Below the pieces are notes generated by a model that saw nothing but the letters and a program-made list of their open reading frames with translations, was not told the DNA's origin and searched no databases. A stretch of DNA of 64,000 bases, taken from positions 1,054,001 through 1,118,000 of the forward strand of contig NC_134036.1 of assembly GCF_964204645.1 (NCBI RefSeq). Direction: 5' to 3'. Below, piece after piece: positions 22,121-51,500 of this stretch. The position numbers and the translations under genes were made by a program. The first letter of the stretch is position 1, and every line of letters begins with the position of its first letter. This DNA is from Tubulanus polymorphus. Its lineage: Eukaryota > Animalia > Nemertea.

Positions 22121-25100
22121 CTAACTAAGGTTCACATAAGTGTCGTGTCCTTCTAAATACAATATCATCAAATCATGCAGTAACTTGTATTGTTCCTTTA
22201 AAAACGACAAAAAGAAAGTACATCAATAAAATTACTCGTGAAAATACACAGAAATCGATTAATTTCTTACCAAATTTGGAATGAATTGAGGTCGAGTCAT
22301 TCGTAATTTTTGTATACAGTGATAGATATCGATTTGTTCGCTAGATGGCGCTTTGGAGATCAGTTCAAATGCCGCACAAAATATCCCCGTTCTCGTTGTG
22401 CTGTCCCTGTAAAATTTGCATAATCGATAAATATATAGATGATTTTTTGAATAATATTGACTGACGTTGCTAAGATACGAACATGCAATGCACAACAATA
22501 GGACTTGTGACGTGTTCTCTTGTAACTAAATTCACAAATTCAAAAAGATCCTGTACATCAGGAACTGGTTCATCCTCAGGCCATCCTAAAAATTGGATCT
22601 GACGAATCTGATGCGATTCCTGTGAGATCAAAGAAATAAGATTGATTTGATCAAATTGATCTGATCACGTCAAACTAAATAACGATGCCAAAAATGCAGC
22701 CATATTTCTCTGAACAGTAGCTACCGAAACAACTCAACATACATTCTGTTTTTGGAGGATCAAATCCCGACGAACGATGGTCTTACAGGGCAATGATACC
22801 TCCTCCACAGTGACAGCAATAGGACCAAATTTAATACTTCCAACTCCAGGCCAATAGCTTGCATATGTCTAAAATCAAAAGATATATTTTAGAAGATACC
22901 TGCAAAGCAAACAGACCTATACAAGGAAGGCAGTGCTAGACTAGGAGTAAGCCTTACCGGATCTTGTGGATATTCTTGATGCATCATTACAATGAGTTCA
23001 CAGTTATAATCAAAGATCATTTGCCAGAAATCAATAATTGTATTTGCCAATGGACTTTGTGTAGCTATAAACACGTTGGTATCTGTGATCGTCTGTTAAA
23101 AGGAAAGTATTTCAATCAGATTCTTATAACTCATCGATATCTCAACTGAAGAATATCGAGGCTTAATGCCCCCCTCCACCGGATATTCTACGGATGGCTA
23201 TTAAATCAGAATCAAACTCACGTGCACAAATGTAGCATTGATGAACCCTTTATGTGAGAGTTGCGGTTGATACTGTGCCTCAGGAAGGATGTCTTTGTAT
23301 CGAGACTTGTAAACATTGTTGAGTAGTTTGGCCACTGCTAGTGATTCCTCGTCTTGAATCGGAGTAGATGCCTTCAATACCTGTATTAGAAAAAAACTCA
23401 TTGAGAAAATCGTTTCCTCAAAACCAACTCAAGGAAGAACGATTTAATTGCTGCCATCCTGTTTTTTGTTCCAGGATCGAACCCTTCATGTCATTTTGGC
23501 CGATCTTAATACGTACAAGAAATTGTTCCTCTATTTTATCAGACACGTTTTTAGATACTGGTCGCGTTGCCTTTCTTTCCTCGTATGATTCTCTGAAACT
23601 CGTGGTCGGATATGCCACCGGTCCCAGTACCAGTTCCTCCAGTAGAATCTGGTGCACGAGAATGTACTGTTTCTGCAGGGAATGGTAATAAAACATATTG
23701 AAGAAGTTCTGGATCTTGAAAACGTGAAATAAAAGACAGTAACTTTATTAAAATTTACCATATTTTGGATCATTTCTGGTCTTTGTGGTCGTAATTTCCT
23801 AAACATGTCGAATACGTTAACGAGTCCATCTTTCTTAGCTTTTTCAAGAAGCTGCTCCGTTGCGATATAACAACCTGTCCTTCCAGCACCAGCCCTGGGA
23901 ACACAAAACAAGCCATAACATTTCTACACGTCTCCTTAGCAGTAAAGGACTGGAAGATTTCGAATACATTTACCTGCCATGAATCAGCACAAGTCCTTGA
24001 TCCGGGTCGGTAAGACGCTGTTTGATGAACTGTTGCATACGAACAACAGATGAAGCCGGGAACGGTACACCATGATCCGGCCACCCTCGATAGTGAAACA
24101 CTATCAGATTATGTGCTTGTTTGTGGCCACGCTATAAAATAAATCCAACGTTACTCATCGATAGAGACTGGTTATAGATATTGCTTATGTGATACAATGT
24201 AACATCGAAACAAAACCTCATCATAAAATGTTGTCATATCGATGTCTACACGTACGAAGTCGTTTGAAATTACAGATAACAACACTTATAACTAATGGTA
24301 AAACAAGAGTATGATCATTACCTTTTTAATCGACAGGAAATTAACCTCTGCCGGAGGCTCAGTGTGTTTTTCCATTTTCTCTGCAACTGTCACTGTAATA
24401 TCTCCATATCGACCTATTGCATCCAGTTTTGTGGGCCAATATCGATGACACTTCACCTGCAATTGGAATATGAAAAGACACATTTTTATGATTCTTCTGT
24501 TTCCACAGCACTATTCGAAAGTGTTTTTGCAACCTTCTTATCTTTGCCTTGTCCTTCAGTCAGATCAGTAAGTACAATAATAGCCGGACATTTCTCTTGC
24601 CAAATCATCCGCCAATGGTCATTGATTGTAGATGGCAATGGAGCTGAAAGAGCAAGTTAGATGAGCGTCCAAGTAACATAAACATATAGAACATGGGATA
24701 GTTAACAAGACTTACCCTGGCAAGCAATGCATATCATATGACCAGTAAATCCCTGAAAATCAAATATCTATATCAACTACAACATTATGAGCACGTGAAA
24801 AAACCTCTCAAGAACAGAAGGATTGATTCCTTACCCGAATATAGTTGGCATTGATGTAATCTGATGTTGGATCTTCACCGATTTGTTCCAGAACAACTCT
24901 AGTCGAATCATCTAGAAAAACAACACAGCTAAGTCAATAGAACGACAAAAAGTTATAGAAATAATTCTTGTATGTTCTTTTAAATGCGATAGAACGTATT
25001 TGGACATGATGAACAGGTAATACTTACAGGCCAAAATGTTTGGAAACCTGTTTTTCTCAAGATTGTCCACTTTCTCAGCGCACTCGCTCAATTCTCGTCG

Positions 25101-28100
25101 CAACTTAAGAACACTCTAAAGACAAAATAGATCCAAAAAATAATCACATGTCTTACCGACGAGCAGTTTTAACCTCCCTGCAATTTTACCTGGAATTCTT
25201 CGCTCATATTCTTCCACTCATCAGAGGTCTTCATCAAAGTGTCTCCCAACAGGTCACAAATCATAGTAGCGCCTTTAGAAGCGATTTCGTAGTGATGATC
25301 CTCGCCATCTTGCGTTTCGGGATCATGATAGATATTGAAATACGCGGAGCTTTCTATATAGACAGGATAAGAATCTTTGGTGTTAAAACATTAGGCTTCA
25401 ACTTTCAAAATCTAAAAGCTTCATTAGACGAACCTCTTGAAAATGCAGAATTTACATCAGCTGAATTTTCTTGTCTTGGGATACCCTTCAATCTCACCAA
25501 AGGTTTACCAATAATGTTATCGGAAGGTGAAATATTCTCCATGGATACATCTGCATTGTTGGATGTTTCTCTAGTTTTGAACCCACCGCGTCTGAAAGAT
25601 GTGAAAAGCTTGAGGCGACCGCGTTGTGGGTAACTGAATTAGGGGTATTTCTGTGAATAGGGGGCATCGGATGATCGTCAAATGATAATGTTATAGAGGT
25701 CGCCACTATTCACTCGTACCTCCAAACTATTAATAGAACAACGGCCACCAATAACAGTATAAGAACAGCTGCAACAACGCCACCTATTATCCCTGCATTA
25801 CTAGACGATGCTTTAACAGTGATTCTCTCTTGTTGTTCTATTGGTGGATAATGCTTAAAAGTTTCCTGGAAAGTCAAGAAGAAATGGACAATTCCAAATT
25901 GGAAACGACAATTTGCATTGAAACACTAGATGAACTCACTCCGTTATAATTGACAACGATTCCTAAAATAAAACTGTAAGATTTCCCAGTTTCTAGAGGA
26001 GCATTAAAGTAACCATTATAGTTACGTGTATCACCAACTGTAAACTCAGAGGGCACTTCCGGTGGTAGAACTGCAGTAATATAAACTGATAATCCTCGCT
26101 GTTTAGCTTCTCCGTACGAGACGTACTGTGATTGGTTGACTGCTCGCTTCCGGCGACGGTTGATTGGTCCATCGTGTTTCTTCACGATCACCTCGTAATC
26201 GCTGAAAATCAGAGAATATCCAGTTTAAAAAAATCATGCGTTATTTATGGATAAATGTATGGAGGACACTTACGTAATGTTACCAGTGTTAACACGTGTT
26301 ATTTGAAGTGTAACAGTCGTGTCTGTTACCGCTGCGTTCTTGAAAACCAGTTGAGGAATTGTTATTTTACCTGAAATATTAGTTACTTCAACTGGTGACA
26401 CGTGACATCAATGGTTACTTGGGGTTGATGTTTTAACGACTCACCTGTCCAAAATCTAACACTGGCAGGCGAGCCTTCACCTTTACTATTCGAGGAAAAA
26501 ATCGAACATTTATATTGAGTAAAAGGTATCAGTGACGTCGTTATGTCTAAAGTTGTGATGGAGCCTTCGATTTTAGATTTGTTAACTGTTTTTATCTTTG
26601 GTAAAGGTGTTGTGGAAGTTGTACTGATGGGTTCACACGTGAGCTGAAAACAGAATATGTAAGAGTAGAATAGTCTGCGCGCGAGGTTACAGTTAGTGCC
26701 TCCTACAGGTCAATACAAGTTAATTCCTACCCGATAATTGATGACGTCACAATTTGGAATGTTTGCTGCTGTCCATGTCAATGTAGTTTTCATTGTGTCC
26801 CATGTGAATGAGAAGTCGAGAGAAGCGGGAGGTTCTGGTACTGAAATAAATACCACAGATAGATTTAGTTTATACGATTCATGAATTGACATATACTTGA
26901 TGACGACGGCAACCTATAACCATCTTTAGGAGTCTAATGTATCTACAGTAAAACAAACATGTTTAACACAATTCTGTGTTTAAATTGATGATTAAGAGTT
27001 TATTAGAATGAGGGGTTTTTACCTGCACACAAAGTCTGTATAGTTAGTATTGGACTAGTCAGACTCGCAGTTGATATAAATTGATTGTTCACTAATTTCT
27101 GTAGACTAACAGCTATCTTATACCCGGTATTAGGAGTTAAACCAGTAATTGTGTGATGTGTAAGGATTCCTGCAGATTCCTGATTAGTCCAAGTGTTTTC
27201 TGATATCTTACGATAAACGACTTGATACTGAACGCTGACAGTACCACGTCCTGAATCTACTACAGAACCCGAGTAAGCTTTCCAACTGACTAATACACTG
27301 TTATTTGTCAGCGCAAATTTTCTTAATTGAGAAAACGACTTAAATTCTGAAAAAGGAAATTGGTTTGTATTAGAGTTAAACCAATATTTTATTTTCGGTC
27401 ATTTCAGATTCATATTGGTACGATATTTAGGGAATAGGGAGTGAGATTCTTAGGAATCTCTGATTCAGTGTAATATACCTGACTCGCACCACTTTCCGAT
27501 GTAATTCTGCGAACAGCCAGATTGACAGATACCACTCAAATAGTCACAACTTTCACTGTTGTTGTAACATCTACATTCAATCATACATCCAAATGAGTTC
27601 GATCCCTTACTGCAATAGCCGGGCGCTAAACATAAATTTTAAACATTTTAAAGGCGATATAAAAAAGCTAATATTTTCATTAAAAAGTAACTGAATATTT
27701 TTTAATCACTAATCGTTAGTTAAACAATTCATAAAATTGATTTATAATCTATTTTCATTCTTTACAATTTTATAAAGTTATGCAAAACTCACCGATATAT
27801 TTGAACCCGAAAACTTCTATTTCTCTTAGGTTGAGATACTCTGCTTTACCAATGTTCTTGTGATGAACGGTGACGTATCGTCCAACTATAGGACCTGGGC
27901 TGCATGGTAATGTTTTATTTGTACCACAGAGAGGGGGGCCCTGGTAAGCACATTTCTGGTTAGATGTAAAAATACTCGGGCTTTTTCCGACTCGAATCTC
28001 CAGGTTGCGCGAACGTTTTTCTGAAAAGAAAATATACAGTTGAAGAAATAATAAACTCGATGCAAAAAATTCTTTTCAAGTTGTCTTCGAATCAAATTTT

Positions 28101-31100
28101 AACTCATAACTCGTGGACCTGGGTCCAGTGTTCCACAAACCTCGGTAGAAAATCAACTCAAGAGTTTTAATTTTAAACTCATCTCGAGTTAAACGTAACT
28201 GAAAACTGTGGGATTATTTATTGTTCGTAGAATCAATATTTGGTTGGTTATAAGAATATTCTTTTTAGTTGAGAGTAAATGAAGTCTATCTGAAGTACTA
28301 TCCAATCATATTTAACCAACATAGAATTTCTTGCCGTACGTTCAGTTCTAGTTGACTTTTAGTGAATAGTCTCATATCCTGTTCATATTTGTTGGTCTTA
28401 TTGTCATATAATACAATGTCGTAAATGTGACAGGTATATCAGCCTCGAATCCCGAACAACAAATAATTCTTATGTTTTATTTACAATTCTAGTTTGCAGA
28501 TATCTAGGCAGAAAACCCATTATCTATTATTGCTTTGCTTATTTAACAAACTTTTTGAGTTGGAAGTCGTTTCGTTTATCACATTTTATTTAACATAATC
28601 AATTATATATCAAACATTGATAATTAGTACTCACTCCATTCAGCGTAACAATCGGCTGCGTCTGTTCTATCCCATAGTGTAACTTCATGTACCACGTATT
28701 GAGTTCCGAGATCAATTCTAATCCAGGCGTCTTGATCCTCATTAGTGTGACATAGTTCAGCACCACCACTTGTTACCGTCTGACCATCTGTACATTTACT
28801 ACCGGGTGAGAGAGTGGATGACATGTTAACTGTTTTACCACGAGCCACGTTACCTACAAAACACATTTTGTGTAGAAGCGATTTAGACACAGCGGAAAAT
28901 TATCTTCAAAAAATTTCTTAAAAGCATTTTTCTTGAGACCTTGTTTTTCAAAACTTTTCACATCATTATTCCTGTTATGATTCATGTATGGGCAGTTCAA
29001 TAATAACCGATCACATGGCAGGTTTGAGTAGTTAATCCGTTAATCTAGGATAAATCTGAGGTTCAGTGATATTTGACCTGACTAACTGGAGCAGAAACAG
29101 AAACTTTACCGATTTGACAAGCTGGTCCGGTCCATCCTGGTGGTGTCCAGGGATATGGAGTTTTTATTGTAGACTCACATGCAGTGTTAGGATTTGGACA
29201 CGTTAAAGCGCCATTTATATTCTGACCCTTTGTTGGACAAACATTCATGGCTGTATTACTGCAATGACACTCCCAACCAGTACAACTCTTCCCAAAACAT
29301 TTTGCTGAAATGACGAAAACATGGTTTTGAAACCTTCAGGAATTTGTAGAATCGTCTCGTTCCATTTTTGAATTACCTGCAGTCGCCGTTTGGTAAGATA
29401 CAGTTTGGGTGTAGACTAACTTCTGAGTGACGTCATTCTTTACACCAACTCTAACTTCATAATCAGTATATGGTTCTAATCCTGTTAGTGTGTGGCCGGT
29501 AGGTTGCGCCACTGTTGTGGTCCATATTTGTCCGAGTTGTTTATATTCGACTTGATAAACAGCTTTAGTGACGTCACACTGTAACTCTGCAGCAGTTAAA
29601 GCCTGCAACATAATAATAATTCACTACACGTTTGTATCGTGTGTCAGTGAAAGAGAAGGTGCACATTTTCTTTGCTTCCAATGGAAATAAATGAACATCA
29701 GGTGAATTTATGTAATTCTGCTCGAGACACACTTACGGTCCATGCAAGTATCAGATAGGCTGTCTGGAGCCACGTGTTACTGTTCTCAACCGCTGTGGAC
29801 ACCACACGTACATCTTTAGGACCGTTTAATGGATCTACAGTAAAACAAACATGTTTAACACAATTCTGTGTTTGAATTGATGATTTAAGAGTTTATTAGA
29901 ATGAGGGGTTTTTACCTGCACACAAAGTCTGTACAGTTAGTATTGGACTAGTCAGACTCGCAGTTGATACAAGTTGACCGTTCTCTAATTTCTGTAGTCT
30001 AACATCTATCTTATACCCGGTATTAGGAGTTAAACCAGTAATTGTGTGATGTGTAAGGATTCCTGCAGATTCCTGAATAGTCCAAATGTTGTCTGATATC
30101 TTACGATAAACGACTTGATGCTGAACGCTGACAGTACCACGTCCTGAATCTACTACAGAACCCGAGTAAGCTGTCCAACTGACTTTTACACTGTTATCTG
30201 TCAGCGCAGATTTTGTTAATTGCGAAAACAACTTAAATCCTGAAAAAGGATATCAACTTATACTGACGTACGTTTCACGGTTATTTTACTTTCAGTCATG
30301 TTCACTTGGCATCATTTTCTATTCATATTGGTTACTATATTTAGGTAGTTGGAGTGAGATTCCCAGGAATCCATGATTCAGTGTAATATACCTGACTCGC
30401 ACCACTTTCCGATGTAATTCTGTGAACAGCCAGATTTACAGATACCACTCAAATAGTTACAATTACTTTCACTGTTGTTGTAACATGAATAACATTCAAT
30501 CATACATCCAAATGAGTTCGATCCCTTACTGCAATCACCGGGCGCTAAACAAACATTTAAAAGTAACAGTAACTTTCGTTTTCATTTCAAAAATTGTTCG
30601 ATTTTTCAGAGATTATGTTCTTAGTCTCCAGAAATTCAATCTAGTCTTAACATTTAGAAAATATCATTTGTTCGATATTTTGGGTAAATTCTTATTACAA
30701 ATATCACTGAATATTTTTGAGAAAGGGAAAATTTGTTTTCATACGTTCTCAATTTTACATATAAAGTTATGCAAAATTGTTTGACATTCTTCCACGAGTC
30801 AATGAATATTTTTCAATCGACCTAATTTTTGTAATCTGTATAATGTATGATCAAATAGATTTCACAGAGGTAGTTATGAAAAACTTACCGATATATTTGA
30901 ACCCGATAACTTCTATTTCTGCCAGGCTGAGATACTCTGCTTTACCAATGTCCTTGTGATGAACGGTGACGTATCGTCCAACTATAGGACCCGGGCTGCA
31001 TGATAATTTTTCATGTTCACCGCAAAGAGGAGATTCCTGGTAAGCACATTTCTGGTTAGATGTAGAAATACTCGGGCTATTCCCAACTCGAATCTCCAGG

Positions 31101-34098
31101 TTGCGCGCGCGTTTTTCTAAGAAAAGAAATTTCGAAATATCGAAGTTTCGAAATGTCGCAGTCAACTCCGTAAAAACAGAAAATAATGCATGGAATTTAG
31201 GGAAGTTGAGAATTTCATCGATTGCTGAACAATTCTATTCGAGTTCGTTTGAAAACGGATGGACTTATTTGCAAAGAAAATTTAAAAGCTGCGAAATATC
31301 TCGGATTATGTTCGTAAAAAACTGGAAGAACTTCGTCGATTGTTTTGGATGCAAAATAATTCTATTCAAATTCTATAGAAAAAGAAGTGGACAAGAATTA
31401 TAGAGAAAAAAAAAGAAGTAGGATAAATTCATTGTTTTCGATTCAAAATCTTCCAACAACGTATTTTGACTGTTTTCACGGATGATAATGACCCAAAGTT
31501 CCACAGTTATAATATACAATGAAATGGAAGAAAGAGTGAAAATTTTAGAAATTTTGTTCTTGAGTTAAAACTGTATCAATTTATCTCGAGCCAAACGTGG
31601 AACGGAATTCAGGATATTTGTGGTTCCTAAAGAATCCATCAATAATTGGTCGATTTTAAGAGTCTCTCGCTCGTCTAAACAGGATTCATATCTAATGAGG
31701 CTTTTCCAGGTGTATTTTCATTCTCATTTTCTATCAGATTTCATCAATCATATTAGCAATGATAATTTGTACTCACTCCACGCGTCTTCAGGGTTACCGG
31801 TGCAACCAGTCGCGTCTGTTCTATCCCAAAGTGTAACTTCATGTACGACGTATTGAGCACCGAGATCAATTCTCATCCAAGCGTCTTGATCCTCATCAGT
31901 GTGACATACTTCAGCACCACCCGTCCCAGTATCCGTCTGACCATCTGTGCATTTATCGCCAGTCCCATGCCGCTTCAAATGGGATGACATAGTAACTGTT
32001 TTACCACGAGCCACGTTTCCTACAAAACACATTTTGTGTAGAATCGATTGAGTGCCAGTTTTTCAAAACGAACCTTTCTTTAGTGTTAGAGATTCAATTC
32101 AAATGCATCGAACTTGATTTCTTTTTTTCTGAACAAACATTTCATTTTTTTCCTCAATTCAAACAATTTGTGTTGGTCTTAGACTCGAATCACAGCAGTT
32201 CCCGGATGTTTGACATTTTCATGAACATAATGCATTTCAGTTCCGTTTTCCCTCATATGGGATTTCAATAAAAGCCGCTTCGCACGATGGATTAGTAGAG
32301 TTAATCCGTTTAACTCAGATAAATCAAACGGTCAGTGATATTTGACCTGACCCCGGTTTACTGGAGCAGAAACAGTTGATACAGAAAACTTACCGATTTG
32401 ACAAGCTGGTCCGGTCCATCCTGGTGGTGTCCAGGGATACGGAGTTTTTATTGTAGACTCACATGCAGTGTTATGATTTGGACACGTTAAAGCGCCATCT
32501 ATATTCTGACCCTTTATTGGACATATGTTCACGGCTGTATTACTGCAATGACACTCCCAACCAGTACAACTCTTCCCAAAACATTTTGCTGAAATAACAT
32601 TAACGAGATATTTTGCTGAAACAATCCTGCCAGTGACAGAGTTTCTTTCTGTAGTTCTTCTCTGGCTCTCAACCCCTGACAATTGATAGTTTGAATCCTG
32701 ACAGTGACAGAAATTCTTTTTGTAGTTGTACTCTGAGCTCTCCACCCCCGACAATTGATAGTTTGAATCCTGACAGTGACACAGTTTCTTTCTGTAGTTC
32801 TTCTCTGAGCTCTCCATCCCCGACAATTGATAGTTTGAATCCTGACAGCGACAGAGTTTCTTTCTGTAGTTCTTCTCTGAGCTCTCCACCCCCGACAATT
32901 GATAGTTTGAATCCTGACAGTGACAGAGTTTCTTTCTGTAGTTCTTCTCTGAGCTTTCCACCCCGACAATTGATAGTTTGAATCCTGACAGTGACAGAGT
33001 TTCTTTCTGTAGTTCTTCTCTGAGCTCTCCACCCCCGACAATTGATGGTTTGAATCCTGACAGTGACAGAGTTTCTTTCTGTAGTTCTTCTCTGAGCTTT
33101 CCACCCCGACAATTGATAGTTTGAATCCTGACAGTGACAGAGTTTCTTTCTGTAGTTCTTCTCTGAGCTTTCCACCCCGACAATTGATAGTTTGAATCCT
33201 GACAGTGACAGAGTTTCTTTCTGTAGTTCTTCTCTGAGCTTTCCACCCCGACAATTGATAGTTTGAATCCTGACAGTGACAGAGTTTCTTTCTGTAGTTC
33301 TTCTCTGAGCTTTCCACCCCGACAATTGATAGTTTGAATCCTGACAGTGACAGAGTTTCTTTCTGTAGTTCTTCTCTGAGCTTTCCACCCCGACAATTGA
33401 TAGTTTGAATCCTGACAGTGACAGAGTTTCTTTCTGTAGTTCTTCTCTGAGCTTTCCACCCCGACAATTGATAGTTTGAATCCTGACAGTGACAGAGTTT
33501 CTTTCTGTAGTTCTTCTCTGAGCTTTCCACCCCGACAATTGATAGTTTGAATCCTGACAGTGACAGAGTTTCTTTCTGTAGTTCTTCTCTGAGCTTTCCA
33601 CCCCGACAATTGATAGTTTGAATCCTGACAGTGACAGAGTTTCTTTCTGTAGTTCTTCTCTGAGCTTTCCACCCCGACAATTGATAGTTTGAATCCTGAC
33701 AGTGACAGAGTTTCTTTCTGTAGTTCTTCTCTGAGCTTTCCACCCCGACAATTGATAGTTTGAATCCTGACAGTGACAGAGTTTCTTTCTGTAGTTCTTC
33801 TCTGAGCTTTCCACCCCGACAATTGATAGTTTGAATCCTGACAGTGACAGAGTTTCTTTCTGTTGTTCTTCTCCGAGCCCTCCACCCCCGACAATTGATG
33901 GTTTGAATCCTGACAGTGACAGAGTTTCTTTCTGTAGTTCTTCTCTGAGCTCTCCATCCCCGACAATTGATAGTTCTACGTGTTAACAACTCTGGAACCA
34001 ATAAATTTATATTGATTTAACTCACCTGATGTGTTTGTGATGAATAAACATAGAATCAACAACAGCAAAAAACGAAAGATGTTTCTTTCACGATACAT
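22121..34098 (-). CDS. Receptor-type PTP-like gene, copy A: SP-[EGF-like/F-type lectin/EGF/FN3/FN3]-[EGF-like/F-type lectin/EGF/FN3]-FN3-membrane-proximal domain-TM-PTP D1(C>G)-PTP D2
   Basis: SP exon 34026-34098 (MYRERNIFRFLLLLILCLFITNTS). Lectin exons ~31776-32018 + ~30889-31116 and 28635-28853 + 27793-28020. TM exon 25720-25865 (IIGGVVAAVLILLLVAVVLLIVW). D1 motifs KNRFPNIL, DYINAN, WRMIWQE, KCHRYWP, WPDHGVP, HGRAGAGRTG. D2 motifs KSRYKDILP, FINA, DFWQMIFD, WPED, HCMDSTTRTG. Last exon 22121-22195 ends ...DTYVNLS*. The exons I checked are open and phase-compatible. Confidence 0.85.
32626..33975. repeat. 71/72-bp minisatellite, ~19 copies, in the intron after the SP exon of copy A
   Basis: Unit GACAGTGACAGAGTTTCTTTCTGTAGTTCTTCTCTGAGCTTTCCACCCCGACAATTGATAGTTTGAATCCT; the central copies are identical. 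Confidence 0.97.
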
Positions 34099-36029
34099 TT
34101 TGTTCATCTGAAATGACGCAATCTAATATCACTTATTTATAGTCATGTGATTAACTCACTTTTATATATGAAAATTACGCAGTTGAGAATAACAAGAATA
34201 TTTTCAAGGGGGGGGGGGAGGTGGCCAGAACACAACATCGCGGGCCTCAGAGTTAGAAGTAGGTGTGTTATAAATGAAACAAGAAAAAACAAATCTTTGA
34301 AAAGTAAAAAGAAAATTTATCAAAAATGAAAAAAATAAACTTCAATTCATTGTGTTCTTGTTAAACACGATAGACTGGGCCCCCTTTCATGTAAAATAAG
34401 ACAAACCATAGGTTTTTCCCGCGTTAAAAAAAACAGGTCTCAGATGAATGAACGTAGATATTAAAGGAATGCGCATTATATGAGAAAGATTTATATACAC
34501 AATATTGAATACAGATATATCCAGGGGCAGAATATTTTAACCACGCGCAAAAAAAATCATCTAGACGTATCGGCCCCACTCCGCGCGGTTGCGCCATTGG
34601 CGGGATTTACGCGAAGCAGCAGAACACAAACACGGCCATTCTCTCAATTTTCAACGATAGAAATCGTGTGTACATTTCATTTATTTCGGCTGTTAGGGTT
34701 TTAAGGCACAATATAAGTTGATGATGTGATATGGCGATGTTAATTAATGATAATTCCGCAGTGAAGCTAGTCACGAACGGTGCCGATTGAGTGTACAGCT
34801 GCCAAAAACACTGAAATGTGCGTAGTTGCGTAACTATTTGCAGTGAATTGCAGACGAAACATGAAGCCTTAACGGCCGTTTAAAAAAAAATTATACCAAT
34901 CGCAATTGTAAAATAAAAATGAGATAGAACCTAAGTTAAATTTTGGCCATTTCTAAAATGTTATTACTAATTTTTAGTCAGTGCCGAACGTTTAGTTTTC
35001 CAACAATAATGAGGGGTGGTAGGTAGTCATGCAATTCAAGTCATCATTTATTACACGTTACCTCCGTGTTGTTGAAAATCTCGCGAGTCCTGGACTAAAC
35101 CCCAATGAACAATGTGATCTGTGTGCTGGCCACAAATGCACACAGATGACACTACACTACCCATTACACACTCCAGTACCCACAGTTTTCATATATCCAT
35201 CCAAATATTTAGAGTGTCTTTCTTCCTGGATATTAGTATCCGTAATATCTATATTTCCCATTTTTCAGTAGTTTAAGAACGTTAACAATAATATGGCTTG
35301 CGCGGGTTGAATTTTCTTGACAGTTTTCACGACCACTGATCTTTGATATGAGATAAGCGGTATTTTTCTGAAAAACTGTAACAAAACATATAAAATCATT
35401 TATGAAATACATGACCACTTGAGTTTGAGATAACGCAGCCCCCCACTGCGCGCCGCAACATGTCACTGAACATGGAACTTTGCTGGTGAAATTTTTTTGA
35501 ATGATCGATTTCACTTTCGTGAAAAATCTTCATTTCATTTCCTTTATAAAGGTGTATGTATAAAATAATTTATGTTGATCTGTTTAAGTGATGGTTCCAG
35601 GATGTTTGACATTTATCTCAATGATGAATTTCATTTCAGTTTTCCCCTTATAAGGACATTAAAATGAGACAAGCCATCGGGTTTTCCCCCATCGCACAAA
35701 ATAGGTCTCAGATAAATGTGGGTACTCATCGTCAGATGATAACGCCACCTATTGCTGCAGAATTAAAACCGAGATCACAGTGAGTTGTATTGCAGCAGTG
35801 AGGCTGCAACACGACGTTCAGCCATCTATATTTTCATGACAGATAATAAGATATAAAATCTAAAGGATATGAATAACAGAACAGTCTTGATCAAAGTTGT
35901 TTGAAAGTGTGGTTTATCGTAACCATTATTTGATATCACGATAGTTAGAGTGTGATTCTTTTTTGAAAACTAGGTCTCTGGGTTTTGAAACCATTCGTAA
36001 TTCATGGTAAGATCGAAAATCCATAAAAG

Positions 36030-36490: not shown

Positions 36491-36662
36491 CGGTTTTATA
36501 GACAAATCATTGGTTTTTCCCCGTGTTACAAAAACAGGTCTTCGATGAATGAACGTAGATATTAAAGGAATGCGCATTTATATTAGAAAGATCAATATGC
36601 ATAATAATATTGAATATAGAAGTTTCCAGGGGCCGAATATTTTATTCGTTTCGTTTCGTTTT

Positions 36663-42567: not shown

Positions 42568-45500
42568 CTAATTGAGGGTCATATAAGTGTCGAATCCGTG
42601 GAAGTTGAATATCACAAGGTCATGCAGCAACTTGTATTGTTCCTAAAAATGAAAAAAAGTTATATCAATAACTGACACTATCAATTCTTTCTAAGAGCAT
42701 TTTGAAGTTAATTTCTTACCAAATTTGGAATGAATTGAGGTCGTGTCATTCGTAGTTTTTGTACAGAGTGATAGATATCGATTTGCTCGCTAGATGGCAC
42801 CTTGGTGATCAGTTCAAATGCCGCACAAAATAGCCCCGTTCTCGTGGTGCTGTTCCTGTAAAATTTGCATAATCGATAAATATGTGATGGAGTTTTGAAT
42901 AAATGATTGATGTTACTAAGATACGAACATGCAATGTACAACAATAGGACTGGTCACGTGTTCTCTTGTAACTAACTTCACAAACTCGAATAGATATTGT
43001 AAATCAGGAACTGACTTATCCTCAGGCCATCCTAAAAACTGGATCTGACGAATCCGACGCGATTCCTGTAGTGAAATATAGGCTAACATGCATTGTTATG
43101 TTAAATAATGTTAATGGTAATGTTAAATAGCAATGTCAATGAAGGATAATTTCGTAAAATGCGGCCATCTTTCTCTGAACATATGGCTATCGAAAATAAA
43201 TCAACCTACATTCTGTTTTTGGAGGATCAAATCCCGACGAACGATGGTCTTACAGGGCAATTGAACTTCCTTAACGGTGATCGTAAAAGGACCGAATTTG
43301 ATACTTCCAACTGCAGGATAATAGCTTGCATATGTCTGAAATCAAAAGAAATCTTAAATCTTAGAAAAAGACATCTGCAAAGCAGTGCTAGACATTGGAG
43401 TAAGCCTTACCGGATCTTGTGGATATTCTTGATGCATCATTACGATAAGTTCACAGTTATAGTCAAAGATCATTTGCCAGAAGTCAGTAATTGTCTTTTG
43501 TAGAGGACTTTGTGTTGCTATAAACACGTTGTCATTTGTGATCGTCTGTAAAAAAGAAAGTATTTACATCAGTCAGGTTCTTACATCTTATCGATATCTC
43601 AACTAAAGAATTTCTAGGCCTTTTCTATCTCAGCCCAGATATTCCATGGATGGCTATGAAATCATAATCAAACTCACGTGCACAAATGAAGCATTGATGA
43701 ACCCTTTATGTGAGAGTTGCGGTTGATACTGTGCCTCAGGAAGGATGTCTTTGTATCGAGACTTGTTAACATTGTTGAGTAGTTTGGCCACTGCTAGTGA
43801 TTCCTCGTCTTGAATTGGAGTCGATGCCTTGAACACCTGTATTAATTAATAGAAGCTCAGTGAAAAAATTGTTTCCTCAAAACCAAACCAAGATGAAACA
43901 ATTTGGACCCCGAAGGAGGAACGATTTGGTCTCTAGTTTAACTTGGTCCGTGGATTAATTGCTGCCATCTTAATGTATGTTCTCAGGCTTCGAAACCTTC
44001 ATCTCATTTTGGCCGATCTTAATACGTACAAGAAATTGTTCCTCTATTTTATCAGACACGTTTTTAGATACTGGTCGCGTTGCCTTTCTTTCCTCGTATG
44101 ATTCTCTGAAACTCGTGGTCGTGTATGCCACTGGTCCCAGTATCAGTTCCTCCAGTAGAATCTGGTGCACGAGAATGTACTGTTTCTGAAGTAGATAGTA
44201 ATAAAGGAACACGTTGAAGTTATCCATTTTGGAAGCGTGAAATGAGAGGCAGTAACTTTGTTAAGATTTACCATATTTTGGATCATTTCTGGTCTTTGTT
44301 GTCGTAATTTCCTAAACATGTCGAATACGTTAACGAGTCCATCTTTCTTAGCTTTTTCAAGAAGCTGCTCCGTTGCGATATAACAACCTGTCCTTCCAGC
44401 ACCAGCACTGAGAACACAACACAAACAATAACATTTCTACACGTCTCCTTAACGGTAAAGGACTGGAAGATTTTCGAATTAATTTACCTGCCATGAATCA
44501 GCACAAGTCCCTGATCCGGGTCGGTAAGACGCTGTTTGATGAACTGTTGCATACGAACAACAGATGAAGCCGGGAACGGTACACCATGATCCGGCCATCC
44601 TCGATAGTGACAAACTAACAGATTATGTGCTTGTTTGTGGCCACGCTATAAAATACATCTAACGTTACTCATCGAGAGAGAGACTGGTTATAGATACTGC
44701 TTATGTGATACAATGTAACATCGAAACAAAACCTCATCATAAAATGTTGTCATATTGATGTTTACACGTATGAAGTCGTTTGAAATTACAGATAACAGCA
44801 CTTATATAGGTCACTAGGTGCCATGGTGAAACAAGAGTATGATCATTACCTTTGTAATCGATAGGAAATGAACCACTGCCGGAGGCTCAGTGTGTTTTTC
44901 CATTTTCTCTGCAACTGTCACTGTAATATCTCCATATCGACCTATTGCATCCAGTTTTGTTGGCCAATATCGATGACATTTCACCTGCAATTGGAATATG
45001 AAGAGACACATTTTTCCTAATTCTCTTGTTTACACAGAAGCATCTGAAAGCAATTTTTGCCGCCACCTTCTTATCTTTGCCTTGTCCTTCAGTAAGATCA
45101 GTAAGTACAATAATAGCCGGACATTTCTCTTGCCAAATCATCCGCCAATGGTCATTGATTGTAGATAGCAATGGAGCTGAAAGAGCAAGTTAGATGAGCG
45201 CATAAGTAACATAAACATATAAAATATGGGAAAGATAACAAGACTTACCCTGGCAAGCAATGCATATCAAATGACCAGTTAATCCCTGAAAATGAGATAT
45301 CCATATCATCTACAACATCATCATATGCACATGACAAAAACTTCTCAAGAACAGAAGGATTGATTCCTTACCCGAATATAATTGGCATTGATGTAATCTG
45401 ATGTTGGTTCTTCACCGGTTTGTTCCAGAACAACTCTAGTCGAATCATCTAGAAAAACAACACAAAATTAAGTCAATAGAACGACAAAAACCTGGAGAGA

Positions 45501-48500
45501 TGTTGTATGCGATAGAACGTATTTGGACATGATCACCAGGTAATACTTACAGGCCAATATGTTTGGAAACCTGTTTTTCTCAAGATTTTCCACTTTCTCA
45601 GCGCACTCGCTCAATCCTCGTCTCAACCTGAGAACACTCTACAGACAAAATAGATCCAAAAAATAATCCCATGTCTTACCGACGAGCAGTCCCAACTTCC
45701 CAGCAATTCTACCTGAAATTCTTCATCCATATTCTTCCACTCATCAGAGGTCTTCATTAAGGTCTCTCCCAACAGGTCACAAATCATAGTAGCGCCTTTA
45801 GAAGCGATTTCGTAGTGATGATCCTCGCCATCTTGCTTACCGTTTACTGGTCTCGGATCGTCATAGATATTGAAATACGCGGAGCTTTCTGTATAGAGAG
45901 GAACCATTAGTGTTCAAACATTGGGCTTCAACTTTTCAAAATCAAAAAGCTTTATTAGACAAACCTCTTGAAAATGTAGAATTTACAAAAGCAGTATTTT
46001 CCTGTCTTGGGATACCCTTCAATCTTGCCAATGGTTTACCAATTATTTTATCGGAAGGTGAAATATTCACTATGGATATTTCTGCATTGTGCGATGTTTC
46101 TTTAGTTTTGAATCCACCGCGTCTGGAAGATGTAAAAACGTTAAGGCATCTAATTGAGGGGTAACTCAATGAGATATTTTTGGTGAATAGAGGGGAATCG
46201 GGCCATTTTCAAATGATGAAATATATGCATTGTATTATAGAGGTCGCCACTATTCACTCGTACCTCCAAACTATAACCAGAACAACAGCCACCAATAAAA
46301 GTATTAAAACTGCTGCAACAACGCCACCTATTATCCCTGCATTATTAGACGGTGCTTTAACAGTGATTCTCTCTTGCTGTTCTATTGGTGGATAATGCCG
46401 AAATATTTCCTGAACAATGGAAAAGAATTGATTGAAGTCATCTTCGAATTGTAAACTAGAATTTATATTTAAAGACAATATGAACTCACTCCGTAATAAT
46501 TCTCAACGATTCCTAAAATAAAACTGTAAGATTTCCCAGTTTCTAGAGGAGCATTAAAGTAACCACTATAGTTACGTGTATCACCAACTATAAACTCAGA
46601 AGGCTCTTTCGGTGGTAGAAATGCTGCAGTAATATAAACTGATAATCCTCGCTGTTTAGCTTTTTCGTACGAGACGTACTGTGATTGGTTGACTGTACGA
46701 TTATGGCGACGGTTGATTGGTCCATCGTGTTTCTTCACGATCACCTCGTAACCGCTGCAAATCATCAGATAAAAATTGTTTTCTTAAATCATGCATTATT
46801 TATAGATGAAAATAAGAGGACACTTACGTAATGTTACCAGTGTTATTAACGCGTGGTATTTGAAGTGTAACAGTCGTGTCTGTTACCGCTGTCTTCTTGA
46901 TAACCAGTTTAGGAATTGTTATTTTACCTGAAATTGAAGAATAAAGCTGTTGACACGTGACTTCAATGGAAACTTGAGGTTGCTGTTTTAACAACTTACC
47001 CGTTGTCCAGAAGCTTACACTGGCAGGCAAACTTTCGCCTTTACTAGTTGAGGCAAAAATTGAACAGTTGTATTGAGTAAAAGGTATCAGTGATGTCGTT
47101 ATGTTTATAGTCGTGGTGGAGCCTTCGATTTCAGGTTTGTTGAATGTTTTTCTTTCTGATAAAGGTGTTGTGGAAGTTGAACTGATGGGTTCACACGTGA
47201 GCTGAAAACAGAAAGGAGACATGTTTAAGTATAGAGCAGGTGGTGCCCTCTACTGGTCAGGACAAGAGAATTCCTACACGATAATTAGTGATATCACCAT
47301 TGGGACGGTTTGGTGGTGTCCATGTCAATGTAGTGTTCAATGTATCCCTTGTGAATGAGAAGTCGAGAGAAGCGGGAGGTCCTGGTACTGAAATAAATAC
47401 CACAGACACATTTAACGTATACAATACAATTCTGCGATTCTCCAACATGTCGTTTTACTTACTTCCAACCTGCGTCAAAAAGTGAACTTTTTTACTCCAT
47501 GGTCCCCAACCCTTTTTGCCTTGTGCCATTACCTATGATGTATCACATTGCTTTAATTTCAATGCATTGTTGAGAAAAGCGAGATTTATAAATTCGCACC
47601 TACCTGGCAACCATACCATTTGTTTTGTGTGAGTCCAGTCACTGTTTTTGTAAGCACAGTTGGTTCAACATCCTCCCTTATAAATTCCTGAATTTGATCA
47701 GAATTATTTTTAGTGGCGTTGCCACACATGAAATTATATTTGATAATTCTTGCTAACGGAGGAACAGGAGAACTCCACGCGAATATGATACTGTTTGGAG
47801 CAGCTGATCGAGCTTCAGGGATCGGTACACCTGGAACTGAAATGTATAAACACATCAAGTTTCTCAAGGTTCATTTATGGATTCATTCCTCAGATTTGAG
47901 GACAGATGAGTTGAATTTCGAAAACTCACCAGCTTCGTCAGTTGTGAATATTTTGCTTGGAGATTCTTCACTGGAACCTTTACTGTTCACCCAGTTATAC
48001 GTCAATTCATACTCTGTAAACGGAATCAGTTTATCTATTCTGAACTGTTTATTCGATGTCGTTCCATCTTTAACAAGTTTCATCGTATCTTTCTCCAGTA
48101 ACTTGTATCTGTAATGTTTGAGAGGTCCGTGTTGGTTTTCACACGCCAAATCCTTGAAAGTGGCATCAATATAAGTGTCTGGCTTGGATACGCTATTTGG
48201 AATAGTCTCAACAGTGACATCAGCCAAGTCAGGTTTACCAGTTGGTTCTGTAACATTGAGGGAAATATTTATTGGTTACAACCGCATTTTTATATCAATC
48301 GAATTTATTTCATAAATCTACAACTAACCAGACTGAAGAGTTATCCCGGTAACAGTCCTCTTGTTTAGATCTAAGCCACCAGCCGAGGTTTCGGCCGAGA
48401 CCGTGATTTCATATTCCGCATAAGGCTTTAACCCAGTGAATACATGTTCTACAGCAGTATTTGATGAAAGTGAAATCTCTTTAGGTTCACCGCCCTGTGC

Positions 48501-51500
48501 TGGAGTCGGACAAGTTTTATATCTGAGAAGTTTGTACCACAATCTGTATTGAATGATAATTCCATTTGGTTTATCAGGTGTAGAACATGTGACTCTGAAG
48601 CCGCTGTTTGTTTGCCGGGACACAGTGAGTGACGTCACAGGTCCAGGAGCTGAAGTAAATGGAAAAATGGCAAATGCGATCAAAATATCTGTGACCAAGA
48701 GTGACGGACGGTTAACTAACCAGTGCTGGAACAGTGTAGTGGGTGTCTGGGATCCTAAGTAAGATCTTTCTTTTAAATTACCTGAGTCTCTATGATAAAA
48801 ATTTGGAAGATCTGTCTCTAATTTCAGATTACCTGCAGTCGGCGTTTGGTAATTTATAGTTTGGTTGTAGATAAACTTCTGAGTGACGTCATTCTTTACA
48901 CCAACTCTAACTTCATAATCAGTGTATGGTTCTAGTCCTGTTAGTGTGTGGCCGGTAGGTTGCGCCACAGTTGTGGTCCATGTTTGTCCGTTCAGTTGTT
49001 TATATTTGACTTGATAAACAGTTTTAGTGACGTCACACTGTAACTGCGCAGCAGTTAAAGCCTGCAACATAATGATAATTCACTACGTAGTAGTCAAATG
49101 AAACACTCTAATCGGTGTACGCTATTCGAAGAAGTCCCACAATGCGAATTGTATATGAAACAACTCATTAAAACAAAACCACAACGGCTATGGACTATAA
49201 CAGCGCACATCAGGTGAAATGACCAGAAAACCTCTTAATTATCAACGTATTAATGAACATAGATTAGATATCAGTTATCAAATGCATGACAGTGGGATTG
49301 CAAACCTTGCTTTTACAACCGACCACCAATTTGACTTTCAGAATTCGAAACTCATTTATCCTTGCAAAGACATCCATAAGAGACACATAGTTGAATCAGC
49401 CCTTTTTTGTAAACTTTCGAAATCCAACATAACTTCCATCATCCGGCCACATAATCAATTATTATCTTGAGATATCAACTCTCTACTAGATTTTGGTTAA
49501 TGTCACTTTGTGTCACACTGCCTTCTCCGTCATCTTCTACTCCTCCGGGGCCGGTTCCATAGTCAAGGCTTAAAATAAGTCTAGTCTTAAGTAATTTTTT
49601 TTCTTAAATCCTCTAAGATCGACTTAACTAAGTTAGTCTTAATTTTGCGTTCCAAAGAGTGGTCTTAGTCTAAGACCAGACTTAAGATTTAAGACCACTT
49701 TTTGGGCATAATTCTCGGAACCGGCCCCTGGTCTACTTCATTTAGTTACATAATTGTATTCATCCTTAGAATTAAATTGTGGTTTCTACGGTAACCCTGG
49801 TTGTTTTCATTTGTCATCTATTCTGTTTACATTTATTCTGACACATCGCTTTTGTTAATGTCCTGTAAGTTTATATGCCAGATGCAACGTTACTTCTGTT
49901 TTCTGGTCATTCCACCTGATAATGGCTGTTAGTCAACAGCCGAAACGTTGAGGTTCCGTTTTGATAAATTGATACATTGCATAAAAATTCGAATTTTGTG
50001 GGACTTCTTCGGTTAATTTACAATATGTCTGTATCGTGTCTCAGTGAAAGAGAAGGTTCACATGCAATTGGATTTATGTAATTCTGGTTGAGGCACACTT
50101 ACGGTCCACGCAAGTATGAGATTGGTTGTCTGGGGCCACGTGTTACTGTTCTCAACCGCTGTGGACACCACACGAACATCTTTAGGACCGTTTAATGGAT
50201 CTACAGTAAAACAAACATGTTAAACACAATTCTGTGTTTGAATTGATGATTAAGAGTTTATTAGAATGAGGGGTTTTTACCTGCACACAAAGTCTGTACA
50301 TTTAGTACTGGACTAGTCAGACTCGCAGTTGATACAAGTTGACTGTTCCCTAATTTCTGTAGTCTAACAGCTATCTTATACCCAGTATCAGGAGTTAAAC
50401 CAGTAATTGTGTGATGTGTAAGGACTCCTGCAGATTCCTGATTAGTCCAAGTGTTTTCTGATATCTTACGATAATCGACTTGATAATGGACGCTGACAGT
50501 ACCACGTCCTGAATCTACTACAGAACCCGAGTAAGCTGTCCAACTGACTTTTACACTGTAATCTGTCAGCGCATATTTTGTCAATGGAGAAAACAATTTA
50601 AATTCTGAAAAAGAAAATTGATTTGTATTGAAGTTTCATGTATATATTACTTTCGGTCATTTCTGATTCATATTGGTTACTATATTTCGGGAAAAGGAAG
50701 TGAGTTTAATTCTGAAAAACAAATCGATGTTAAATTTAGGTGAATCAAATAAAATGAAGTGTAAGGATCTTTTACTTCCGGTCATTTCTGATTCATATTG
50801 TTTAATATATTCAGGGAATAGGGAGTGAGATTCCAGGAATCTATGATTCAGTGTAATATACCTGACTCGCACCACTTTCCGATGTAATTCTGTGAACAGC
50901 CGGATTGACAGGTACCATTCAAATAGTTACAACTTTCACTGTTGTAACATGGATAACATTCAATCATACATCCAAATGAGTTCGATCCCTTACTGCAATC
51001 ACCGGGTGCTAAACAGACATTTTAAACGTGATACGTAAATATGAATTGTTTGACATTCTTCCACGAGTCAATGAATATTTCTCAATCGACCTAATTTTTG
51101 TAATCTGTATAATGTATGATCAAATAGATTTCACAGAGGTAGTTATGAAAAACTTACCGATATATTTGAACCCGATAACTTCTATTTCTGCCAGTGCGAG
51201 ATACTCTGCTTTACCAATGTTCTTGTGTTGAACGGTGACGTATTGTCCAACTATAGGACCTGTGCTGCATGCTGATGTTTTATTTTTACCACAGAGAGGG
51301 GGCCCCTGGTAAGCACATATCGGGTTAGATGTAGAAATACTTGTATTGGTGCCATATTCATTTCCAACTCGAATCTCCATGTTGCGCGCGCGTTTTTCTG
51401 AGAAAAAATTAAGAAGCTTTGAAATATCGCAGTTTACTCCGTGAAAACAAAATTAATGCGCAAAATCAGAGAAGTTTAAAATTGCTTTGAGTGCAAAACA

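What the first reader, a model, noticed from the sequence alone, without database searches (positions are those of the whole stretch)
23880..24131. PTP D1 catalytic cysteine is replaced by glycine in all three receptor copies
The spliced P-loop reads VLIHG-R-AGAGRTG in A and VLIHG-S-AGAGRTG in B and C, against the canonical VHCSAGxGRTG. The GGC codon is at 23976-23978, 44490-44492 and 56821-56823. WPDHGVP, the P-loop Arg and the Q-loop (MIQNMKQY) are retained, and KNRY is KNRF. Cys>Gly is the substitution found in the pseudophosphatase STYX, and Cys-less PTP pockets can act as substrate traps. Sharing across diverged copies argues against sequencing error and places the change before duplication. 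D1 is normally the active domain of RPTPs, so this is unusual.
Basis: partly seen in the sequence, partly recalled or inferred. Interest (0 to 1): 0.85.

Follow-up and report, generated by a model that had tools for sequence, protein, structure and literature searches.

The report
Cysteine-less receptor tyrosine phosphatase gene family
A ribbon worm carries at least 18 copies (three in this window) of a cell-surface tyrosine-phosphatase receptor whose main catalytic domain has glycine in place of the essential cysteine yet is still spliced, intact and under purifying selection, so it most likely works as a non-enzymatic signalling receptor.

Summary
On the minus strand, all three tandem genes end the D1 WPD exon with ...(L)IHG, using GGC at 23976-78, 44490-92 and 56821-23. 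Across a 79-80 nt GT-AG intron they continue with (R/S)AGAGRTG. The Gly aligns with the catalytic Cys of the PTPRE, PTPRS, PTPRA and LAR D1 domains.

The organism is the nemertean Tubulanus polymorphus. RefSeq models give the same junction: P0013 is copy A and P0020 is copy B. Spliced contigs of one RNA-like public run join the same junction in paralogs.

Genome-wide, 18 paralogs carry GGC. Sixteen of them have all 14 cytoplasmic exons open. Basal paralogs keep the canonical HCSAGAGRTG.

D1 of the Gly copies is constrained. ω is 0.33 over 8 independent pairs (p = 4e-20 against neutrality), the same as D2 and the Cys-bearing paralogs. The P-loop Arg, the WPD Asp, the His and the Q-loop Gln residues are invariant. 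D2 was already degenerate (WPE, HCMDSTTRTG). Ectodomain exons evolve faster (ω 0.6-1.0).

Best reading: this is a lineage-specific family of receptor pseudophosphatases whose D1 binds substrate but cannot hydrolyse it. Binding itself is untested.

The scan has already flagged the same family at other loci of this genome. I rate it a new variant of a known kind, of moderate interest.

The parts
22124..34107 (-). Copy A: complete receptor gene. It matches RefSeq P0013 (1820 aa, named 'PTPRT-like'). Order: signal peptide, two units of Cys-rich + galactose-binding-like lectin + EGF-like + FN3, TM, D1, D2.
   Evidence: Exact 33-exon match of P0013 to the window. Pfam architecture.
23974..24131 (-). 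Copy A D1 exon, from RGHKQ...WPDHGVP to ...VLIHG plus AG of a split codon. GGC (Gly in place of the catalytic Cys) is at 23976-23978.
   Evidence: Pfam profile positions 130-175 in the equivalent exon of copy C. G aligns to the catalytic C of solved D1 domains.
23895..23973 (-). 79-nt GT-AG intron that splits the P-loop between HG and (R)AGAGRTG in copy A.
   Evidence: Sequence and the RefSeq model. The same junction is seen joined in X3 contigs that derive from S-type paralogs, as loose ends at 23974 and 23897.
23759..23894 (-). Copy A D1 exon: (R)AGAGRTGCYIATEQ...RPEMIQNM. It holds the P-loop Arg and the first half of the Q-loop.
   Evidence: X3 joint 23672/23759 with CT..AC ends.
23517..25115 (-). 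Whole D1 of copy A (8 exons, KNRF to EEQFL), including a 37-nt microexon at about 24716-24752.
   Evidence: X3 joints 24911/25028 and 24644/24834 (35 letters between = microexon).
22124..23380 (-). D2 of copy A (6 exons): WPE instead of WPD, VHC-MDSTTRTG (Cys codon 22485-22487), Q-loop FIPNLEQY, stop codon at the end.
   Evidence: X3 joints 22405/22482 and 22618/22742 with CT..AC ends.
42571..53645 (-). Copy B: complete receptor gene. It matches RefSeq P0020 (1789 aa).
   Evidence: 33 exons, 1786 of 1789 aa matched exactly.
44488..44645 (-). Copy B WPD-to-HG exon. GGC is at 44490-44492. An intron at 44408-44487 and the P-loop exon at 44272-44407 (SAGAGRTG) follow.
56819..56976 (-). Copy C WPD-to-HG exon. 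GGC is at 56821-56823. An intron at 56740-56818 and the P-loop exon at 56604-56739 follow.
54900..64000 (-). Copy C (approximate lower bound). The gene runs off the window's right end. D2 lies at about 55.0-56.25 kb and D1 at 56.5-60.8 kb. A roughly 2.8 kb insertion sits in the D1 intron between 57.6 and 60.4 kb.

Best explanation
The three genes are members of a young family of at least 18 type-I receptor tyrosine 'phosphatases'. So far the family is known only from Tubulanus polymorphus. The membrane-proximal PTP domain (D1) lost its nucleophile through a single TGC>GGC change.

Shown: the change is in the DNA of all copies, in the gene models and in spliced transcript-like contigs. The genes are intact, and D1 evolves at about a third of the neutral rate. 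Every other pocket element is fixed: the KNRF pTyr loop, the WPD Asp, the His, the AGAGRTG backbone with its Arg, and both Q-loop Gln. D2 was already a degenerate pseudo-domain in the Cys-bearing relatives.

Follows from established PTP chemistry: without the Cys thiolate no cysteinyl-phosphate intermediate can form, so D1 cannot hydrolyse phosphotyrosine, and the whole receptor is catalytically dead.

Inferred: the preserved pocket still docks phosphotyrosine substrates. The receptor would then act as a non-hydrolysing pTyr binder. It could be a natural substrate trap, scaffold or competitor of the Cys-bearing sister receptors. It is coupled to a faster-evolving lectin/FN3 ectodomain.
For: Sequence and junction. 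RefSeq models carry HG(S/R)AGAGRTG in 10 annotated proteins, and P0013 and P0020 map exactly to copies A and B. Run X3 shows GT..AG-type joints at predicted exon borders, and spliced contigs read ...IHG|SAGAGRT and ...VHG|S. Census: 18 GGC copies against TGC in L039, L041-L045 and L025. Sixteen GGC copies have 14 of 14 cytoplasmic exons with no stops. Constraint: D1 ω = 0.33 over 8 independent pairs (binomial p = 4e-20), D2 ω = 0.31, Cys-bearing pair ω = 0.35. Intron p-distance is 0.114, against pS 0.091 and pN 0.030. The P-loop and following helix are invariant in 17 copies. Pan-PTP conserved columns are invariant in 49 of 62 cases against 128 of 210 elsewhere (Fisher p = 0.006). The fold is intact: AF2 pLDDT 88, pTM 0.86, and 1.9 Å rmsd to PTPRK, PTPRT and PTPRM D1. 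Precedent: STYX has Gly for Cys, and Gly>Cys restores its activity (PMC9464862, PMC8269279). PTPRU is an RPTP with two dead domains that still binds substrates of related phosphatases (PMC7320164).
Against: There is no biochemical test of activity or of pTyr binding. ω of 0.33 is only moderate constraint and equals that of the whole young family, so it does not single out the pocket. Invariance of pocket residues could reflect fold stability rather than ligand binding. The P-loop-preceding Pro is Leu (GLVLIHG), and copy A has Arg instead of Ser next to the Gly, which may alter the pocket. RNA support comes from contigs of a run whose library type is not on record, and the joined contigs derive from S-type paralogs rather than provably from copy A. 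No orthologs from other species were found, so long-term retention cannot be shown.
Confidence: 0.6

Rival explanations
1. D1 is kept only as a structural or docking module, for example to hold D2, a wedge/dimer interface or a non-phospho partner. It no longer binds phosphotyrosine, and the receptor signals by clustering or sequestration that does not depend on the pocket.
For: Constraint is spread over the whole cytoplasmic part (D1 0.33, D2 0.31). There are changes close to the pocket: Pro>Leu before the HG, YIA>CIA in motif 4, and Ser>Arg in copy A. In PTPRK, D2 pseudo-domains recruit substrates by surfaces outside the pocket (PMC9640194, title and abstract).
Against: Arg, WPD-Asp, His, the Q-loop Gln residues and the AGAG backbone stretch are all invariant in 17 copies. 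Pan-PTP conserved positions are held more tightly than the rest of D1. The old D2 of the same proteins shows what a pocket looks like once it is released: WPE, MDSTTR, and loss of the Q-loop Gln.
Confidence: 0.25
2. The Gly copies are non-functional duplicates on their way to becoming pseudogenes, so the substitution is simply the first lesion.
For: The array is young and tandem, with gene-conversion-like mosaic dS. One copy is partial (L035).
Against: Sixteen of 18 copies keep all 14 cytoplasmic exons open with conserved GT-AG sites. dN/dS is 0.33 with p = 4e-20 against neutrality, while introns diverge at the synonymous rate. Spliced transcripts and RefSeq models exist. The summed branch length of the Gly clade, about 0.6 substitutions per site by my own sum of the tree, left time for a neutral pocket to decay.
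Confidence: 0.04
3. Catalysis has moved to D2, which keeps Cys and Arg (HC-MDSTT-R), so the receptor is still an active phosphatase.
For: The CX5R spacing is intact in D2 of all copies. From general knowledge, some D2 domains such as PTPα and LAR have weak or restorable activity.
Against: D2 has Glu for the general-acid Asp (WPE), has no Q-loop Gln (FIPNLEQY), and has Asp/Ser/Thr/Thr in place of the AGxG backbone cradle. The identical D2 is present in the Cys-bearing paralogs P0003, P0010 and P0011, so it did not change when D1 lost its Cys.
Confidence: 0.06
4. Artefact: an assembly or annotation error, or an alternative exon or RNA change that restores Cys in the mRNA.
For: None was found. 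Only contigs, not raw reads, could be laid.
Against: The same GGC is present in 18 separate loci on four contigs. There is no alternative WPD exon in the genes. No differing letter is reported at 23976-23978 in the runs that cover it (table 3). No known RNA editing turns G into U (general knowledge).
Confidence: 0.01

Closest known systems
STYX (phospho-Ser/Thr/Tyr-interacting protein), the prototype pseudophosphatase
   Same: It has the same lesion: the catalytic Cys is replaced by Gly while the P-loop Arg is kept (HGX5R). In STYX, Gly>Cys restores activity, which shows that the pocket stays competent for binding (PMC9464862, PMC8269279).
   Different: STYX is a small cytosolic dual-specificity-phosphatase-fold protein. 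Here the lesion sits in the D1 of a classical, two-domain transmembrane receptor PTP. The two are not homologous beyond the superfamily level.
Human PTPRU (R2B receptor PTP with two pseudophosphatase domains)
   Same: It is a receptor with FN3-containing ectodomain and tandem D1-D2 in which both domains are inactive. It is proposed to compete with active paralogs (PTPRK) for substrates (PMC7320164). D1 of copy A is structurally closest to R2B D1 domains (PTPRK, PTPRT, PTPRM), and the membrane-proximal FN3 hits Pfam Fn3_PTPRU.
   Different: PTPRU keeps its catalytic Cys and is inactivated by loop rearrangements. The worm proteins keep the motifs and lose the Cys. Pfam finds no MAM or Ig domains here; instead there are galactose-binding-like lectin and EGF-like modules. 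The worm family is also amplified to at least 18 genes.
Cys-bearing sister receptors in the same genome (P0003, P0010, P0011; contig C12 at 0.28-0.31 Mb)
   Same: They have the same architecture, the same degenerate D2 and 70-76% identity in D1. They also share KNRF, WPDHGVP and the Q-loop.
   Different: They keep the canonical ILIHCSAGAGRTG and so are presumably active. They differ from the Gly clade at Pro>Leu before the HC/HG and in motif 4.
Engineered substrate-trapping PTP mutants (Cys>Ser/Ala, Asp>Ala)
   Same: A nucleophile-less pocket with the binding residues intact holds substrates without turnover (cited via PMC8269279, ref. 24, Flint et al. 1997).
   Different: Those are laboratory mutants. 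Here the state is natural, inherited and under selection. Gly rather than Ser or Ala also removes the side chain completely.

Membership tests
Classical receptor-type PTP (tandem D1-D2) | Two Y_phosphatase (PF00102) domains C-terminal to a TM segment | tested here: met
   Pfam finds 2 stretches with E = 4e-119 in P0013. A hydrophobic segment lies in the exon coding aa 1111-1159.
Classical receptor-type PTP (tandem D1-D2) | Ectodomain with FN3 repeats | tested here: met
   fn3 gives 4-5 stretches. Fn3_PTPRU and F5_F8_type_C_2 lectin-like modules are also hit.
Classical receptor-type PTP (tandem D1-D2) | Catalytic signature (I/V)HCxAGxGR(S/T)G with the nucleophilic Cys in D1 | tested here: not met
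   HG(S/R)AGAGRTG is present in A, B, C and 15 further paralogs. The G aligns to the catalytic C.
Classical receptor-type PTP (tandem D1-D2) | WPD general-acid loop, Q-loop and KNRY pTyr loop in D1 | tested here: met
   WPDHGVP, MIQNMKQY and KNRF (Tyr>Phe, also present in the Cys-bearing paralogs and an amphioxus RPTP).
Pseudophosphatase of the STYX type (HGX5R) | PTP-superfamily fold with Cys>Gly at the nucleophile and Arg retained | tested here: met
   AF2 model pLDDT 88 and Foldseek 1.9 Å to PTPRK D1. HG-x5-R is present.
Pseudophosphatase of the STYX type (HGX5R) | Homology to the STYX/DUSP subfamily | tested here: not met
   The best sequence and fold matches are classical RPTP D1 domains. 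The only DSPc Pfam hit in P0013 and P0020 is a weak one over D2.
Pseudophosphatase of the STYX type (HGX5R) | No phosphatase activity but binding of phosphorylated ligands | not testable with these tools
   This needs recombinant protein assays.
PTPRU-like double-pseudophosphatase RPTP (R2B) | MAM-Ig-FN3 ectodomain | tested here: not met
   There are no MAM or Ig Pfam hits in P0013 or P0020.
PTPRU-like double-pseudophosphatase RPTP (R2B) | Both D1 and D2 catalytically incompetent | tested here: inconclusive
   The sequence predicts it: D1 has no Cys, and D2 has WPE, MDSTTR and no Q-loop Gln. Activity was not measured.

The most novel reading that the evidence does not exclude
The Gly-type and Cys-type receptors could form a paired system. 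They have the same lectin/FN3 ectodomain architecture and lie on the same chromosome. On ligand (glycan?) engagement, the Cys-type would erase phosphotyrosine while the amplified Gly-type would protect or trap it. Together with the fast-evolving, module-swapping ectodomains, this would be a diversified recognition-receptor repertoire (immune or self/non-self) built on a phosphotyrosine 'reader' derived from a dead phosphatase. That would be analogous in logic to paired activating and inhibitory immune receptors.
Probability: 0.15. Interest if true: 0.75.

Novelty: new variant of a known kind. Interest (0 to 1): 0.5.

Why it matters
In the textbook picture, D1 carries the activity of receptor tyrosine phosphatases. 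The only well-studied receptor with a dead D1, human PTPRU, keeps its cysteine. Here nature has made the classic Cys-less 'substrate trap' in a receptor D1, kept everything else of the pocket, and amplified the gene at least 18-fold under purifying selection, next to Cys-bearing sisters. That gives a natural active/dead receptor pair with which to test whether RPTP signalling can run on phosphotyrosine binding alone. It also supplies ready-made trap domains for finding RPTP substrates in a spiralian. Finally, a third subgroup of the same family has lost the P-loop Arg instead, so D1 has been inactivated in more than one way in this family.

Tried and rejected
(1) I asked whether L006 was an intronless retrocopy that could serve as a natural cDNA. 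It is not: it is an ordinary intron-containing HG copy whose intron happens to stay open in frame.

I did not reconstruct ancestors by other means. I used 8 phylogenetically independent pairs instead.

(3) I searched for orthologs or transcript fragments in other species. The exhaustive exon search, the D1-region search with P0003 and the short-fragment search with P0002 found nothing closer than about 30-42% identity outside T. polymorphus.

(4) Only four runs were offered for RNA evidence, all kept as contigs and with the library type unrecorded. X4, the run guessed to be RNA, laid nothing.

(5) A global A-versus-B ectodomain dN/dS failed in the middle, because A aa 517-887 and the corresponding part of B are not homologous modules.

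Exons were searched by reference, and for whole-protein work I used database proteins (P0013, P0020, P0003) that match the window.

Full report
**What is there.** The finding lies on the minus strand. In each of three tandem genes the exon coding RGHKQ...WPDHGVP... ends with GTG CTG ATT CAT GGC AG followed by gtaa. After a 79-80 nt intron the next exon supplies the last base of a split codon and then GCT GGT GCT GGA AGG ACA GGT. Pfam's Y_phosphatase model matches the two exons at profile positions 130-175 and 175-224, so the splice falls at the catalytic Cys position. phmmer against PDB chains aligns the Gly with the Cys of VHCSAGVGRTG in PTPRE and PTPRS D1. Motif scanning found no second WPD-type exon inside the genes, so an alternative HC exon is excluded.

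**Whose genes.** An exhaustive protein search with the WPD exon, followed by a cluster look-up, identified the organism as the nemertean Tubulanus polymorphus, which has RefSeq gene models. RefSeq protein P0013 (1820 aa, automatically named 'PTPRT-like') matches copy A residue for residue over 33 exons at window 22124-34107. P0020 (1789 aa) is copy B at 42571-53645. Copy C runs off the right end of the window.
- Architecture by Pfam: galactose-binding-like lectin module(s) (F5_F8_type_C_2), FN3 repeats including an Fn3_PTPRU-type membrane-proximal one, and two Y_phosphatase domains. Cys-rich EGF-like stretches and a hydrophobic TM segment are read directly from the translated exons.
- Ten annotated proteins of this species carry HG(S/R)AGAGRTG in D1.

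**RNA support.** Four public runs were offered, all stored as contigs and with no library type on record. Run X3 behaves like RNA. It carries joints with CT..AC ends (GT..AG on the gene strand) at my predicted exon borders: 22405/22482, 22618/22742, 23672/23759 and 24911/25028. It also skips 24644-24834 with 35 letters between, which correspond to the 37-nt microexon. Two X3 contigs that start at 23974 are preceded by ...CCAGCACCAGCA. That is the P-loop exon of the Ser-type paralogs joined directly to the HG exon, which reads LIHG|SAGAGRT. Another contig gives the VHG|S variant seen in other paralogs. So the junction is confirmed in transcripts of the family. For copy A's own Arg-type junction I have only the RefSeq model. 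No differing letter is reported at the GGC codon (table 3).

**Family census.** Searching the whole 268 Mb assembly with the exon gave 25 loci, and all 29 first-look candidates were scored.
- Eighteen loci end in (I/V/L)HG with GGC: the three in this window, twelve at C12:1.32-1.47 Mb, and single copies at C12:2.51 Mb, C7 and C9.
- TGC is kept in three full-length paralogs at C12:0.28-0.31 Mb (P0003, P0010, P0011; canonical ILIHCSAGAGRTG) and in a dispersed, truncated copy on C10 (L039/P0002, with an in-frame stop in the DYINA exon).
- TGC is also kept in more distant genes. Among those, the P0024 group reads HCSSGCGWTG, which means it has lost the P-loop Arg instead.
- Sixteen of the Gly copies have all 14 cytoplasmic exons open, with no stop codons.

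**When the change happened.** A codon-alignment tree with the Cys/Gly codon left out puts all Gly copies plus L039 in one clade (95/98 support). The three Cys paralogs are its sister group, and L036 is basal within the clade. L039 nests inside with weak support, so the best tree needs two changes, for example one loss and one reversion. Holding all Gly copies together costs 8.5 lnL units and is not rejected (AU p = 0.105). Every Gly copy uses GGC, one transversion from TGC.

**Is D1 still constrained?** Yes.
- Pairwise dN/dS among Gly copies is 0.27 in D1, against 0.29-0.34 among the Cys paralogs.
- Over eight pairs that share no branch, D1 has 156 nonsynonymous and 137 synonymous differences. 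This gives ω = 0.33, with binomial p = 4e-20 against neutrality. D2 gives 0.31, and a Cys-bearing pair gives 0.35.
- Introns of the same pairs differ at p = 0.114. This is close to the synonymous rates (0.091 in D1, 0.120 in D2) and nearly four times the nonsynonymous rate of 0.030.
- Across 17 copies, the stretch G..GAGRTGCYIATEQLLEKAKKDG, the preceding His, WPD and the Q-loop (RPEMIQN.KQY) are invariant.
- Columns that are at least 90% conserved in 17 non-Tubulanus PTPs are invariant in the Gly copies in 49 of 62 cases, against 128 of 210 for other columns (Fisher p = 0.006).
- An AlphaFold2 model of copy A's D1 is confident (pLDDT 88.4, pTM 0.86). It superposes on PTPRK, PTPRT and PTPRM D1 at 1.9 Å.

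**D2 and the ectodomain.** D2 reads WPE, VHC-MDSTTRTG and FIPNLEQY in both Gly-type and Cys-type paralogs. It was therefore already a typical degenerate D2 and did not change when D1 lost its Cys. Between A and B, the homologous ectodomain exons run at ω of about 0.6-1.0 and the cytoplasmic exons at 0.15-0.45. The middle of the ectodomain is built from different modules in the two copies. dS varies several-fold between exons, which suggests gene conversion.

**Mechanism.** The classical PTP mechanism needs the Cys thiolate to form a cysteinyl-phosphate intermediate, so a Gly at that position abolishes catalysis (established knowledge). What remains is a pocket with all its binding elements held by selection. 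The closest chemical precedent is STYX, which has HGX5R and regains activity on Gly>Cys (PMC9464862, PMC8269279). The closest architectural precedent is human PTPRU, described as unique among human RPTPs in having two pseudophosphatase domains and as binding substrates of related phosphatases. PTPRU keeps its Cys (PMC7320164). I therefore read these genes as receptor pseudophosphatases whose D1 binds phosphotyrosine ligands but does not turn them over, and which possibly compete with the Cys-bearing sisters. Catalytic death is near-certain. Binding is an inference (about 0.6). A pocket-independent scaffold role is the main rival (about 0.25).

**Novelty and context.** I found no paper describing a receptor PTP with a Cys-less D1, and none on this family. 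The library is limited, though, and large phosphatome surveys may list similar cases. No close relatives exist outside T. polymorphus in the protein collections searched. The scan itself has already flagged the same family at other loci of this genome: the arrays 0.25 and 0.31 Mb downstream, the Cys-type cluster 0.74 Mb upstream, and a dispersed copy. Those notes agree with my reading. I used them only as leads. This is a new variant of a known kind (pseudophosphatase) and is of moderate interest.

**Limits.** I did not search with a self-joined spliced model. Exons were searched by reference, and database proteins were used for whole-protein steps. Ancestral reconstruction was not available and was not attempted by other means. 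Only contigs, not raw reads, could be laid.

Noticed in passing
L044 and L045 (G000:C12:10.63 Mb and 4.02 Mb), L023 (C12:9.25 Mb); protein P0024: A more distant subgroup of the same receptor family keeps the D1 Cys but reads HCSSGCGWTG, so the P-loop Arg is replaced by Trp. This is a second, independent way of inactivating D1.
   Followed up: partly
L039 (G000:C10:9375414-9382572); proteins P0002 and P0009: This is the only Cys-bearing copy inside the Gly clade. It is dispersed to another contig, has an in-frame stop in the DYINA exon, and is annotated only as a 353-359 aa fragment. It is either a relic that split off before the Cys>Gly change or a Gly>Cys reversion. The AU test cannot decide (p = 0.105).
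   Followed up: partly
window 23894-23896 (copy A): Copy A alone has Arg instead of Ser right after the Gly (split codon AG|G against AG|T in the other copies). This is a further change inside the P-loop.
   Followed up: partly
window about 57630-60400 (copy C): A roughly 2.8 kb insertion, absent from A and B, sits in a D1 intron of copy C between the microexon/DYINA exons and the TINDHW exon. It is probably a mobile element.
   Followed up: no
window 32522-34032 and 52952-53610: Arrays of 71-72 nt tandem repeats (up to 14 copies, some 100% identical) lie in the 5' part of copies A and B, between the first coding exons. The B array is open in all three minus-strand frames for more than 120 codons.
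   Followed up: no
window 27024-29305 (copy A aa 517-887) versus copy B: A carries a second Cys-rich + lectin + EGF + FN3 unit where B has different FN3 modules (17-27% identity in a forced alignment). This points to module turnover in the ectodomain.
   Followed up: partly
P0013 residue 1373 (KCxxYWP motif), all Gly copies: The pan-PTP conserved Cys of the KC..YWP motif is Tyr in 5 of 17 Gly copies.
   Followed up: no
window 22124-25115 (A) versus 42571-45600 (B): Synonymous divergence differs up to ten-fold between neighbouring exons (dS 0.04-0.48). This suggests a mosaic of gene-conversion tracts between tandem copies.
   Followed up: no
window 36641-40139: A truncated ectodomain-only relative lies between copies A and B. 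It was noted by another first-stage finding and I did not examine it.
   Followed up: no
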